12,573 nt of DNA from Octopus sinensis (lineage: Eukaryota): the NCBI RefSeq assembly GCF_006345805.1, contig NW_021826539.1, forward strand, positions 1-12,573, in the 5' to 3' direction. Every line of letters starts with the position of its first letter. Position 1 is the stretch's first letter. Made by a program: the position numbers and the translations under genes. Positions 2,405-9,450 of this stretch are shown here, in pieces. The notes below the pieces were generated by a model, which worked only from the letters and a program-made list of their open reading frames with translations, searched no databases and was not told where the DNA came from.

Positions 2405-2591
2405 AACATATACACACGTATCTGCGCTCTGATACATGTGTGCGTGTGCACGTGTGTATGTGTGTGTGTGTAGAATAATGAATAGATGTGCATGTGTGTA
2501 CATATTATATATACATATATATATATATATAATATATACATACATATATATATATACATATATATATATTATATGCATATATACATATATA

Positions 2592-2640
<49 letters not shown>

Positions 2641-2715
2641 TATAATATATATATTATAGATAATATATATTACATATATATGTATATATATATAGTTATA
2701 TATATATATGTATAT
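2405..2715. repeat. (TG)n/(TA)n microsatellite region
   Basis: Direct reading. Confidence 0.93.
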
Positions 2716-2894
2716 AGATTGTTTATTATTCAACAAGTAAAAGGATAACTAAATATACGTCGTGGTTATTATTTATTTTGTAAATTATATAATCCTGTTA
2801 GGAGATTCTGCCACAGTAGTCTCGACATACAGACTCAGTTAAACGATCGACACCTCTTCAGACTGCGTGAAAATAAACATGCCCACACCATCTT

Positions 2895-2954
2895 ACACAG
2901 ACACACACACACACACACACCACACACACACACACACTCACATATATGTATATA
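2895..2954. repeat. (CA)n/(TA)n microsatellite flanking the foldback element
   Basis: Direct reading. Confidence 0.9.
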
Positions 2955-3019
2955 TTAACAGAATGAGATAAAAAAAATCCAAAGCTTTGAATAGTTTTCA
3001 GAACATTTATAAAGAGAAT

Positions 3020-3067
3020 GTCTTACAGCTGTTTCCGGGATATTTTATATACCCCTTCATCAGAGAC
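3020..3067 (-). ncRNA. Minimal type-I hammerhead ribozyme (left arm)
   Basis: Minus strand: GUCU [CUGAUGA] A GGGGUAU-AUAAA-AUAUCCC G [GAA] AC-AGCU-GU A AGAC. Stem I is GUCU/AGAC, stem II is 7 bp (one G.U), stem III is the palindrome ACAGCUGU, and the triplet is GUA with predicted cleavage between 3024 and 3023. An extra A and G sit between core and stem II (non-canonical). Activity untested. Confidence 0.8.
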
Positions 3068-3263
3068 GGTGCGAGAAAACGTTAAGTAACAGTTATTATA
3101 GAGAAGATATGAAATACAGAATGAAGTGGCGGGATAAAAACACTTAAGATACAGATCTGAAGATACAATATCCTTATGTATCTCACGTCTGTTTTCATTC
3201 CTCCACTTCACTCAGTATTTCTATTTTCTCTATTATAACTATTACTTAACGTTTTCTTGCACC

Positions 3264-3311
3264 GTCTCTGATGAATGGATGTATAAAATATCCTGGAAAC
3301 AGCTGTAGGGC
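3264..3311 (+). ncRNA. Minimal type-I hammerhead ribozyme (right arm)
   Basis: Plus strand: GUCU [CUGAUGA] AU GGAUGU-AUAAA-AUAUCC UG [GAA] AC-AGCU-GU A GGGC. Stem I is GUCU/GGGC (two G.U), stem II is 6 bp, the ACAGCUGU palindrome is the same, and GUA cleavage is predicted after 3307. Activity untested. Confidence 0.72.
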
Positions 3312-3526
3312 CTTCTCTTTCTAAATGTTCTGAAATTTTCACTGCCTTGGATATTTTATCTCATTCTATTAATTTATATATATATGCATGCTAATACACG
3401 ACCCCCGATGGACTCCTCATTAATATCATTATCGAACCTGGAGCTTAATATAGTCTGTCCATAGCACTTACTCACCATTACATGATAAGTTTGGGTCTTC
3501 TTGACACCAATACCTCTCATTCTCAA

Positions 3527-3557
<31 letters not shown>

Positions 3558-3561
3558 TACA

Positions 3562-3983
3562 TATTCTTTTATTTCTTTGCTTGTTTCGGTCATTTGACTG
3601 CGGCCATGCTGGAGCACCGCCTTTAGTTGAACGAATCGACCCCAGGACTTATTTTTTGTAAGCCTAGTACTTATTCTATCGCTCTCTTTGGTCGAACCGC
3701 TAGGTTACGTGGAACTAAACACACTAGCATCCCGTCGTCAAGCGATGTTGGGAGGACAAACACACTAAAACACACACATGCAAATATGTATATATATATA
3801 CGTGTGTGTGTATATATAATATATACGACGGACTTCTTTCAGTTACCGGCTACCAAATCCACTCAAAAGTCGTTGGTCGGCCCGAGGTTATAATAGAAAA
3901 CACTTGCCCAAGGTGTCACGCAGTACGACTGAACCCGGAACCATGTGATTGGTTAGCAAGCTACTTAGCACACAGACACTCCT
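3562..3983 (-). mobile_element. tRNA-derived SINE family A, diverged copy
   Basis: Reverse complement aligns along its length with the copy at 5824-6306: head, GGTTCAGTC B box, central (TA)/(TG) tract, and AAGGCGGTGCTCCAGCATGGCCGCAGTCAAATGAC tail with an AAAGAA-type end. Confidence 0.9.
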
Positions 3984-8574: not shown

Positions 8575-9450
8575 AATGAAATGTCATCGCCCTCATCGCT
8601 GTCATAACCGTCAGCGTTGTCATCGTCGTCATCGTCGTCATAATGTTCATTGTGTCATCGTCCTCATCATTGTCATCATCGTCATCGTTGTCATTATCGT
8701 TGTAGTCGTCGTTGTCATCGTCGTTATTGTTGTCATCGCCTTCATCGTTGTCATAATCGTCATCGTTGTCGTCGTCGTCGTTGTCATAATGATCATCGTT
8801 GTCATAATCGTCATTGTTTTCATCCTCGCTGTCCTCGTCATCGTCATCGTCATCGTCGATGTCGTCGTCGTTATCGTTGTCATCGTCATCATCGTTGTCA
8901 TCATCTTTGTCATCGTCATCGTCATCGTCGTTGTCATCGTCGTTATTGCTCTCATCGTCATTATCATTGCCGTCATCGTCATCGTTGTTGTCGTCCCCGT
9001 TTTCATTGTCGTAATCGCCATCATTGTCATCGTCATCGTTTGTCATCATCGTTGTCGTCGTCGTTGTCATCGTCATCGTCGTTGTCGTCGCCGTTATCGT
9101 TGTCATCATCATCATCGTTGTCATTGTTGTCATCATCTTTGTCATCGTTGTTGTTATCGTCATCATCATTGCCATCATCGTCATTGTCGTAGTCGTCATC
9201 ATTGTCATCGTCATCGTTTGTCATCACCGTTTGTCATCATCGTTGTAGATGTCATCATCATACCTGTCATCGTCCTGGTTATCAGCATCCACTTCATTGG
9301 TCCCATCATTTTCCTCATCGCACGTCACAGTCGCCATCGACATTGTTGTCATCATCGTAGCCGACGTTATATTCGTTCTCATCGTAACTGGTGTCATCGA
9401 TTTCCTCATCGTTGTTTTCATTGTCGTCGATCTAATCGCAATCATTGTTA
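8575..9450. repeat. Degenerate trinucleotide array (ATC/GTC/GTT/ATT)n, i.e. (RTY)n
   Basis: About 870 bp of phased RTY triplets with occasional single-base phase shifts (TCGTTTGTC near 9040, 9218 and 9231). Confidence 0.93.

What the first reader, a model, noticed from the sequence alone, without database searches (positions are those of the whole stretch)
2955..3372. Foldback unit with two hammerhead ribozymes of opposite polarity
Seen: about 195-bp arms around a 25-bp spacer. The left arm encodes a complete type-I hammerhead on the minus strand (3067-3020) and the right arm one on the plus strand (3264-3311). Both have CUGAUGA, GAAA, a GUA site and the self-complementary stem III ACAGCUGU, and both 3' ends point outwards into TA-rich microsatellite. 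Known: PLE pLTRs carry minimal hammerheads with palindromic stem III that cleave as dimers, and PLE insertions can have inverted pLTR duplications. Paired plus/minus hammerheads base-paired in a rod are also the layout of Avsunviroidae and other viroid-like RNAs. Inference: read-through from either side makes the antisense arm first, so the ribozyme would be masked in a long hairpin (self-silencing, and a Dicer/ADAR substrate). Divergent transcription from the centre would instead give two sense ribozymes able to heterodimerise through ACAGCUGU. This may be a non-autonomous ambisense-ribozyme retroelement family rather than a chance rearrangement.
Basis: partly seen in the sequence, partly recalled or inferred. 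Interest (0 to 1): 0.85.

Follow-up and report, generated by a model that had tools for sequence, protein, structure and literature searches.

The report
Head-to-head Penelope retroelement ends with hammerheads
The foldback is real, but it is the usual scar left when a Penelope-like retrotransposon inserts as two truncated copies facing each other, each carrying that element's own small hammerhead motif; it is not a new kind of two-ribozyme element.

Summary
Window 2955-3140 (minus sense) and 3154-3378 (plus sense) are inverted copies, about 87-89% alike. Each carries CUGAUGA, a 7-bp helix II, GAAA, the self-complementary ACAGCUGU and a GUA site, at the stated coordinates.

The arms are not a unit of their own. 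They are the last 190-225 bp of the roughly 1.1-kb 3' UTR of a long retroelement. Its longer copies hold remnants of a reverse-transcriptase-like region, a linker and a GIY-YIG-like region, so the parent is Penelope-like (PLE).

The family shows the published PLE insertion signature:
- steep 5' truncation;
- insertion into (TA)n;
- a "tail" on one side only (here 3390-3527, right side);
- head-to-head pairs in about a quarter of loci (15 "-+", 0 "+-"), abutting within -10 to +18 nt.

The junction lies at a different element position in every pair. Each foldback is therefore made afresh at insertion and is not copied as a family.

The motif fits the published PLE "minimal hammerhead". However, it has an extra G before G12, gets no Rfam hit, and shows no covariation. 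Twice as many intact copies in the genome read CCGAUGA (U4 to C) as CUGAUGA.

Cleavage and transcription remain untested. The scan has noted similar octopus PLE hammerheads many times. Interest is low.

The parts
2502..2716 (.). Upstream (TA)n microsatellite. TA-rich sequence resumes at 2943-2954, directly against the left arm, after a (CA)n run at 2895-2942.
   Evidence: Tandem Repeats Finder; sequence
2955..3140 (-). Left arm: a 5'-truncated 3'-terminal fragment of the PLE 3' UTR (reference L077 about 2104-2291), minus sense, with no tail. It lies 5.9% from the majority of subfamily A/TG.
   Evidence: blastn to the reference copy; subfamily distances
3020..3067 (-). Left-arm minimal hammerhead motif. 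Helix I is GUCU/AGAC. The core is CUGAUGA followed by an extra A. Helix II is 7 bp with a 5-nt loop. Then come an extra G, GAAA, and C-AGCU-G as a palindromic helix III/loop, ending in U-A. The predicted cut lies between 3024 and 3023.
   Evidence: Sequence; pattern search; the dimer minimum-energy fold is a double hammerhead
3141..3153 (.). 13-nt junction between the two truncated 5' ends.
3154..3378 (+). Right arm: a 5'-truncated 3'-terminal fragment of the same PLE 3' UTR (reference L077 2066-2289), plus sense. It lies 8.6% from the majority of subfamily A/TG.
3264..3311 (+). Right-arm minimal hammerhead motif, decayed: a U-U at the base of helix II, and helix I GUCU/GGGC with two G-U pairs. 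The predicted cut is after 3307.
   Evidence: Sequence
3390..3527 (+). One-sided 'tail': an element segment of about 131-138 nt that follows the right arm after a short TA-rich spacer (3379-3389). The same segment follows 21 of 61 arms elsewhere in the genome.
3528..3564 (.). A-run and (TA)n: the downstream part of the TA-rich target.

Best explanation
[quoted passage not shown] It landed in a (TA)n tract as two 5'-truncated copies placed head to head, with their 3' ends outward.

Shown here:
- Each arm is the last 190-225 bp of the element's 3' UTR.
- Each arm carries the element's own minimal hammerhead motif about 65-110 nt from the element's 3' end.
- The right copy keeps the optional tail and the left copy does not.

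Inferred: the pair arose during integration. The published model fits this. A purified PLE protein nicks and extends both DNA strands at AT-rich sites, so two cDNAs grow inward from the two flanks and meet at their truncated 5' ends. A snap-back of the first cDNA is an alternative route.

Inferred: both copies are dead passengers. Any read-through RNA would fold into a hairpin of about 190 bp that hides the ribozyme. The motif itself is a weak, dimer-type and possibly protein-assisted hammerhead at best, and its cleavage is not needed for the family to spread.
For: 1. Arm identity. Both arms map to the 3' end of reference copy L077. The number of homologous copies rises from 11 at the 5' part to 66 at the 3' end. 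The 5' ends of the sampled copies are spread over reference positions 1523-1896.

2. Parent. The long copy L076 matches protein P0006 over its RT-like part (residues 71-499, E = 2e-85) and its linker plus endonuclease part (residues 549-805, E = 3e-30). These are contiguous with the 3' UTR and the hammerhead arm. The C-terminus of P0006 gives a sub-threshold Pfam GIY-YIG match (E = 0.006-0.012). ESM Atlas neighbour clusters and a homologue carry GIY-YIG and RVT_1.

3. Census of about 61 loci: 46 single copies, 15 '-+' pairs, 0 '+-' pairs. Junction gaps are -10 to +18 nt, and the junction position differs in every pair. Six further '-/+' motif pairs appear in the genome-wide pattern list.

4. 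Tail. It follows 21 of 61 arms. Of 9 foldbacks, 7 have it on exactly one arm and none has it on both.

5. Target. TA microsatellite flanks this locus and many others.

6. Literature.
- PMC8557442: PLE insertions are 5'-truncated, often have an inverted 5'-truncated copy adjacent, often carry a tail at one end only, and are biased towards (TA)n.
- PMC4209133: minimal hammerheads have helix II of 7-8 bp, helix I of 4-5 bp, an extra nucleotide after A9 and palindromic 15.2-16.2. Paired minimal hammerheads 100-700 bp apart on opposite strands were already seen in Schistosoma.
- PMC11167929: the PLE protein cuts and extends both strands, the tail lies between two RT start sites, and hammerhead mutants still insert.

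7. The whole region folds as a hairpin.
Against: - The two arms are no more alike than random family pairs: 86.6% identity against a background of 88.2 +/- 3.2%. They share only 2 rare states, which equals the 95th percentile of the background. A single event is therefore inferred from geometry and orientation, not from shared mutations.
- Pfam does not recognise the RT part, and the GIY-YIG match is below threshold.
- No partial tandems (pseudo-LTRs) were seen in the sampled loci.
- The tail here is about 131 nt after a TA spacer, much longer than the published 30-40 bp.
- No intact, full-length master copy was found.
Confidence: 0.87

Rival explanations
1. It is a distinct non-autonomous 'ambisense ribozyme' foldback element that is copied as a unit. 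The two opposed hammerheads would work together, by divergent transcription and heterodimer cleavage or by self-silencing.
For: The head-to-head arrangement recurs. Both arms share the self-complementary ACAGCUGU. The in-silico dimer of the left-arm motif folds as a double hammerhead.
Against: The junction position differs in every pair, and arm lengths range from about 40 to about 1300 nt. Three quarters of loci hold single copies. The arms are simply the end of a long RT-like/GIY-YIG-like element. The right-arm motif is decayed. Most of the family carries CCGAUGA. There is no evidence of a central promoter.
Confidence: 0.03
2. These are two independent insertions of the same family into one (TA)n hot spot, which happen to lie in opposite orientation.
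For: The arms are no more similar to each other than to other copies. The family targets TA microsatellites.
Against: Orientation is 15 '-+' to 0 '+-'. The 5' ends abut within -10 to +18 nt in nearly all pairs. The tail is never on both arms. Both window arms share a private variant in the stretch just 5' of helix I.
Confidence: 0.05
3. A single inserted copy was later duplicated in inverted orientation at the DNA level, by fork stalling or template switching at the microsatellite.
For: The locus is microsatellite-rich, and the arms are old enough for this (13% apart).
Against: The same geometry recurs at many unrelated loci with outward 3' ends and a one-sided tail. This points to the integration mechanism, not to sporadic repair.
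Confidence: 0.03
4. The 'hammerhead' is only a look-alike sequence with no ribozyme ancestry or activity.
For: No Rfam hammerhead hit, even at E <= 10 on a 76-nt slice. An extra G lies between C11.1 and G12. Twice as many intact family copies read CCGAUGA as CUGAUGA. There is no covariation beyond shuffles.
Against: All other parts of the published PLE minimal-hammerhead descriptor are present, at the expected place near the 3' end of a PLE (PMC4209133). The named pairs hold in 94% of cells, against 13-53% for slid controls. The dimer fold is a double hammerhead.
Confidence: 0.15

Closest known systems
Penelope-like element insertions with an adjacent inverted 5'-truncated copy (Evgen'ev & Arkhipova 2005; Craig et al. 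2021, PMC8557442)
   Same: 5' truncation, head-to-head inverted copies with 3' ends outward, a tail at one end only, a (TA)n/AT-rich target, and a hammerhead motif near the element's end.
   Different: No partial tandems (pseudo-LTRs) were seen in the sampled loci. The tail is about 131 nt after a TA spacer instead of 30-40 bp. The RT part is too divergent for Pfam RVT_1.
Minimal hammerheads (min-HHR) of metazoan PLEs (Cervera & de la Pena 2014, PMC4209133)
   Same: A CUGAUGA/GAAA core, a 7-bp helix II, a 4-bp helix I, an extra nucleotide between A9 and 10.1, a very short helix III with a palindromic loop (dimer type), thousands of mostly single copies, and pairs on opposite strands 100-700 bp apart.
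   Different: An additional G between C11.1 and G12, which forms an A/G apposition under helix II. The majority of the family has C at core position 4 (CCGAUGA).
PAc Poseidon element of Anolis, studied in vitro (Frangieh et al. 2024, PMC11167929)
   Same: An AT-rich target, two alternative RT start sites that delimit a tail, and hammerhead cleavage not needed for insertion. Both DNA strands are nicked and extended, which would give head-to-head copies.
   Different: That work is biochemical and on a vertebrate element. Here there are only genomic scars. In PAc the hammerhead lies at the pseudo-LTR/ORF junction, whereas here it lies about 65-110 nt from the 3' end of a 1.1-kb 3' UTR.
Non-LTR retrozymes of animals (Cervera & de la Pena 2020, PMC7229834; Li et al. 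2026 preprint, 10.64898/2026.07.22.740005)
   Same: Non-coding hammerhead-bearing repeats related to PLE ends.
   Different: Retrozymes are direct tandem repeats whose same-sense ribozymes release unit-length circular RNAs. Here the two motifs have opposite sense, and no tandem was found.
Avsunviroidae and other viroid-like RNAs with plus and minus hammerheads
   Same: One hammerhead in each polarity and a rod-like fold.
   Different: Here it is a DNA inverted repeat of one and the same motif, with variable arm lengths between loci. There is no replicating circular RNA and no distinct plus and minus ribozymes.

Membership tests
Hammerhead ribozyme (PLE minimal type) | Conserved core CUGAUGA ... 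GAAA and a cleavage triplet N-U-H | tested here: met
   Both window arms have CUGAUGA, GAAA and GUA. Family-wide, however, CCGAUGA (496 pattern hits) outnumbers CUGAUGA (249). CCAAUGA has 90 hits.
Hammerhead ribozyme (PLE minimal type) | Helices I, II and III in the right places; long helix II, short helix I, palindromic 15.2-16.2/loop 3 | tested here: met
   Helix I is 4 bp, helix II 7 bp, helix III 2 bp plus an AGCU loop. 94.2% of 637 cells are paired across 49 copies, against 13-53% when the 3' partners are slid. The left-arm dimer minimum-energy fold is a double hammerhead.
Hammerhead ribozyme (PLE minimal type) | G10.1-C11.1 pair directly adjoining G12, with one extra nucleotide allowed after A9 | tested here: not met
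   The extra A after A9 is present, but there is also an extra G between the last C of helix II and G12, in nearly all copies.
Hammerhead ribozyme (PLE minimal type) | Recognition by curated covariance models (Rfam hammerhead families) | tested here: not met
   No hammerhead hit at gathering score or at E <= 10, including a 76-nt slice. Helix-III-poor minimal hammerheads may escape such models generally; this was not tested here.
Hammerhead ribozyme (PLE minimal type) | Compensatory changes that support the helices | tested here: inconclusive
   The observed values equal the shuffled values on every measure. The copies are neutral decay products of a few masters, so no signal is expected.
Hammerhead ribozyme (PLE minimal type) | Site-specific self-cleavage | not testable with these tools
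   This needs in vitro transcription. Only assembled contigs were available from the sequencing runs, and contigs cannot show RNA ends.
Penelope-like element (parent of the arms) | A single ORF with a reverse transcriptase and a GIY-YIG endonuclease | tested here: inconclusive
   L076 holds RT-like, linker and endonuclease-like remnants matching P0006 (E = 2e-85 and 3e-30). GIY-YIG is sub-threshold in Pfam (E = 0.006). RVT_1 is not detected. Atlas neighbour clusters and homologue P0151 carry GIY-YIG or RVT_1. RT motifs (DKT.., YRDDG) were read by eye.
Penelope-like element (parent of the arms) | Strong 5' truncation of copies | tested here: met
Penelope-like element (parent of the arms) | An inverted 5'-truncated copy adjacent at the 5' end (head-to-head) | tested here: met
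   15 '-+' pairs and 0 '+-' pairs among about 61 loci, with gaps of -10 to +18 nt.
Penelope-like element (parent of the arms) | An optional tail, often at one end only | tested here: met
   21 of 61 arms have it. In foldbacks, 7 of 9 have it on exactly one arm and none on both. Its length of about 131 nt is atypical.
Penelope-like element (parent of the arms) | Partial tandem copies that form pseudo-LTRs | tested here: not met
   No true tandem was found among the sampled loci. The '--' and '++' calls were split alignments of single copies. The sample is small and made up mostly of short copies.
Penelope-like element (parent of the arms) | AT-rich or (TA)n target preference | tested here: met
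   The window flanks and the flanks of many other copies.
Non-LTR retrozyme | Direct tandem repeats, each with a same-sense hammerhead, releasing circular monomers | tested here: not met
   The motifs have opposite sense and no tandems were found. Circular RNA is not testable here.
Foldback/MITE DNA transposon | Fixed terminal inverted repeats with target-site duplication, copied as a unit | tested here: not met
   Arm lengths and junctions vary between loci, and the arms are a retroelement 3' end. A target-site duplication cannot be read in TA repeats.

The most novel reading that the evidence does not exclude
About a quarter of the insertions of this abundant PLE family are tight head-to-head pairs. 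Read-through transcription across the genome could therefore yield thousands of long, near-perfect hairpin RNAs. In an octopus these could be a major, PLE-made source of double-stranded RNA for ADAR editing or small-RNA pathways.

Separately, the CCGAUGA (U4 to C) core that dominates the family might still cleave with protein help. That would be a new natural core variant of the hammerhead.
Probability: 0.07. Interest if true: 0.55.

Novelty: new member of a known kind. Interest (0 to 1): 0.22.

Why it matters
The result matters mainly as a clean negative. An arrangement that looks like a two-ribozyme, viroid-like device is explained by known Penelope-like element biology.

Three smaller points may interest people who work on PLEs:
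- The locus and its family give a natural record that fits the in vitro finding that PLE enzymes prime on both DNA strands: head-to-head pairs only, abutting 5' ends, and a tail on one side only.
- The tail is unusually long, about 131 nt behind an internal TA run.
- The family spread mostly with a hammerhead core mutated at U4. This agrees with the in vitro result that ribozyme cleavage is not needed for insertion.

Tried and rejected
- Rfam scans of the whole window, the 521-nt region and a 76-nt slice gave no hammerhead hit. They gave only meaningless plant-miRNA hits caused by the long hairpin.
- I first took the family for a short element of about 500 bp, then about 2 kb, with a fixed 5' end. 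Both were artefacts of using 5'-truncated copies as queries. Comparing the copies with each other showed that homology continues upstream.
- The upstream repeat next to L021 is a different family of about 490 bp and is not part of this element.
- The shared-rare-variant test for a single origin of paired arms was weak: 0-2 shared states against a background 95th percentile of 2.
- Covariation analysis gave no signal beyond shuffles.
- Sequencing runs held only assembled contigs. No run is on record as RNA, and depth is swamped by family copies, so nothing can be said about transcription, strand or RNA ends.
- Pfam on the RT-like part and a PDB sequence search gave nothing. The large protein search returned only unnamed proteins.
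- The direction of the U4 change (CUG to CCG or the reverse) could not be settled from three subfamilies without an outgroup.

Full report
**1. The observation**

The sequence at 2955-3372 is a genuine inverted repeat.
- Aligning the reverse complement of 2940-3165 with 3165-3390 gives 89% mean column identity.
- The longest ungapped core is 2996-3109 against 3222-3335.
- As RNA the region folds into one long hairpin: -233 kcal/mol, z = -27, and no shuffle folds as well.

The pattern CTGATGA-N(8-30)-GAAAC occurs exactly twice in the 12.6-kb window, once on each strand and once in each arm, where 0.06 matches are expected by chance.

Read directly, both copies are laid out as follows:
- helix I strand GUCU;
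- CUGAUGA, followed by an extra A;
- a 7-bp helix II with a 5-nt loop, followed by an extra G;
- GAAA;
- C-AGCU-G, so that ACAGCUGU is self-complementary;
- U and A17, then the second helix I strand.

The only correction is that the arms are unequal: the right arm reaches 38 nt further 5', and 13 nt lie between the two.

**2. What the arms are**

The right arm has at least 2,106 first-look candidates in the window's own 2.72-Gb assembly. Copies extend different distances upstream.

Twice I mistook a truncated copy's end for the element's true 5' end. Comparing the copies with each other showed each time that homology goes on.

On reference copy L077 the window's arms are only the last 190-225 bp. 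The number of homologous copies rises from 11 at the 5' part to 66 at the 3' end. This is the gradient expected of 5'-truncated retrotransposition.

The parent element has coding remnants:
- An ORF remnant at the 5' part of the longer copies hits 1,910 proteins.
- Copy L076 carries remnants of all three parts: RT-like (E = 2e-85), linker and endonuclease-like (E = 3e-30). A 3' UTR of about 1.1 kb follows, ending in the hammerhead arm.
- The Pfam evidence is weak. GIY-YIG is sub-threshold (E = 0.006-0.012) and RVT_1 is not detected.
- ESM Atlas neighbour clusters and one homologue do carry GIY-YIG or RVT_1.

RT combined with GIY-YIG is the domain pair that defines Penelope-like elements (PMC8557442). 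I rate the assignment to PLEs as probable rather than proven.

**3. How the foldback arose**

In about 61 non-redundant loci I counted 46 single copies, 15 head-to-head ("-+") pairs and no tail-to-tail pairs. There were no real tandems.
- The two truncated 5' ends abut within -10 to +18 nt in most pairs.
- The junction lies at a different element position in every pair. Examples in reference coordinates are 1861/1823 here, 1792/1764, 1216/1312 and 243/901.
- Six more "-/+" motif pairs appear in the first hundred hits of a genome-wide pattern search.

A segment of about 131 nt (window 3390-3527) follows 21 of 61 arms after a short TA spacer. Of nine foldbacks, seven have it on exactly one arm and none has it on both. 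In the window only the right arm has it. Flanks are TA microsatellite here and at many other loci.

This matches, point for point, the published description of PLE insertions in PMC8557442: high 5' truncation, an inverted 5'-truncated copy adjacent at the 5' end, a tail often present at one end only, and microsatellite bias.

PMC11167929 supplies a mechanism. A purified PLE protein nicks and extends both strands at AT-rich DNA, and it starts reverse transcription at two alternative internal sites that delimit the tail. Two inward-growing cDNAs would give exactly the geometry seen here. This step is inference, and a snap-back of the first cDNA is an alternative.

The arms themselves do not prove a single event. 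They are 86.6% alike, which is no closer than random family pairs, and they share only two rare states. They do share a private variant just 5' of helix I.

**4. The ribozyme**

The motif fits the minimal hammerhead of metazoan PLEs described in PMC4209133:
- helix II of 7-8 bp;
- helix I of 4-5 bp;
- an extra nucleotide between A9 and 10.1;
- palindromic 15.2-16.2/loop 3;
- mostly single, heterogeneous copies.

That paper also reports paired motifs 100-700 bp apart on opposite strands in Schistosoma.

Four things weaken the case for an active ribozyme:
- There is an extra G between C11.1 and G12 in nearly all copies.
- No Rfam hammerhead model matches.
- Across 49 copies the helices hold in 94% of cells, but the shuffled control gives 94% too, so there is no covariation.
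- Among copies with an otherwise intact motif, 496 read CCGATGA, 249 read CTGATGA and 90 read CCAATGA, with none in the reversed-pattern controls.

Allowing about 90 CTG copies as CpG decay products (by symmetry with CCA), most of the family descends from masters with C at core position 4. From general knowledge of hammerhead mutagenesis, that change should cripple catalysis.

Three subfamilies can be told apart: A/TG, to which the window's arms belong, B/TG and B/CG. The direction of the U4 change cannot be settled without an outgroup.

In silico, two left-arm motifs fold into the classical double hammerhead, with an intermolecular 8-bp helix III. The right-arm motif, with a U-U mismatch and a wobble-paired helix I, does not.

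The literature reports low in vitro activity for minimal hammerheads (PMC4209133). It also reports protein-assisted cleavage that is dispensable for insertion (PMC11167929). The spread of the U4C lineage agrees with that.

**5. Function of this locus**

I found no evidence of function. The only sequencing data available were assembled contigs.
- An exact 161-nt contig over 3192-3352 is present in one run that is only guessed to be RNA.
- The unique left flank (2730-2888) is present exactly in a run carrying a second organism label.

These show that the locus exists in those runs, nothing more. A read-through RNA would bury either ribozyme in the hairpin. The most likely status is a pair of dead, old copies, 6-9% from their subfamily majority.

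**6. Comparison and novelty**

The arrangement, the ribozyme type and the opposite-strand pairs are all in the literature.

Earlier notes of this scan list many PLE-type hammerheads and head-to-head double copies in the same genome, on other DNA. Those notes name the genome as Octopus sinensis; I did not verify that here. I used the notes as leads only.

What is specific here is a particular octopus PLE family with a long one-sided tail, an A/G apposition beneath helix II, and a majority U4C core. I class the finding as a new member of a known kind, of low interest.

Noticed in passing
L021:2110-2600 (G000:C11, upstream of that locus's copy): A different repeat family of about 490 bp with 3,832 first-look candidates. 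It often lies in partial tandems and in head-to-head pairs (for example C7:82849825-82851401 and C10:42164685-42165714). It is probably the 491-base hammerhead repeat noted earlier by the scan.
   Followed up: partly
window 3575-3650; also L016 upstream of its copy: A SINE-like repeat (it includes the stretch ...GACTGCGGCCATGCTGGAGCACCGCC...) lies just downstream of the insertion and recurs near another copy.
   Followed up: no
window 8582-9261: A long imperfect tandem of 9/18-nt units (GTCATCGTC...), about 650 bp, overlapping ORFs of 213-302 aa on both strands. Its nature was not examined.
   Followed up: no
L072-L075 (contigs C11952, C11276, C9905, C9592); L078/L079: Four unplaced contigs carry 100% identical 3.7-kb stretches, which suggests assembly redundancy. 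A 10-kb block on C5 and on C11952 is 94-96% identical, which suggests a segmental duplication.
   Followed up: partly
L013:1745-1786, L017, L009/L010 and L024 at the 5' junctions: Several 'single' copies have a short inverted piece (11-42 nt) at their truncated 5' end. It overlaps or lies just upstream of the truncation point. These look like abortive versions of the head-to-head structure and may bear on the mechanism (snap-back versus two-strand priming).
   Followed up: partly
Genome-wide pattern hits, for example G000:C4:106090252-106090291: A few copies carry double changes in helix II that keep pairing (A-U to G-C). There is also a sub-lineage with loop AAUAAA instead of AUAAAA. There are too few to call this selection.
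   Followed up: no
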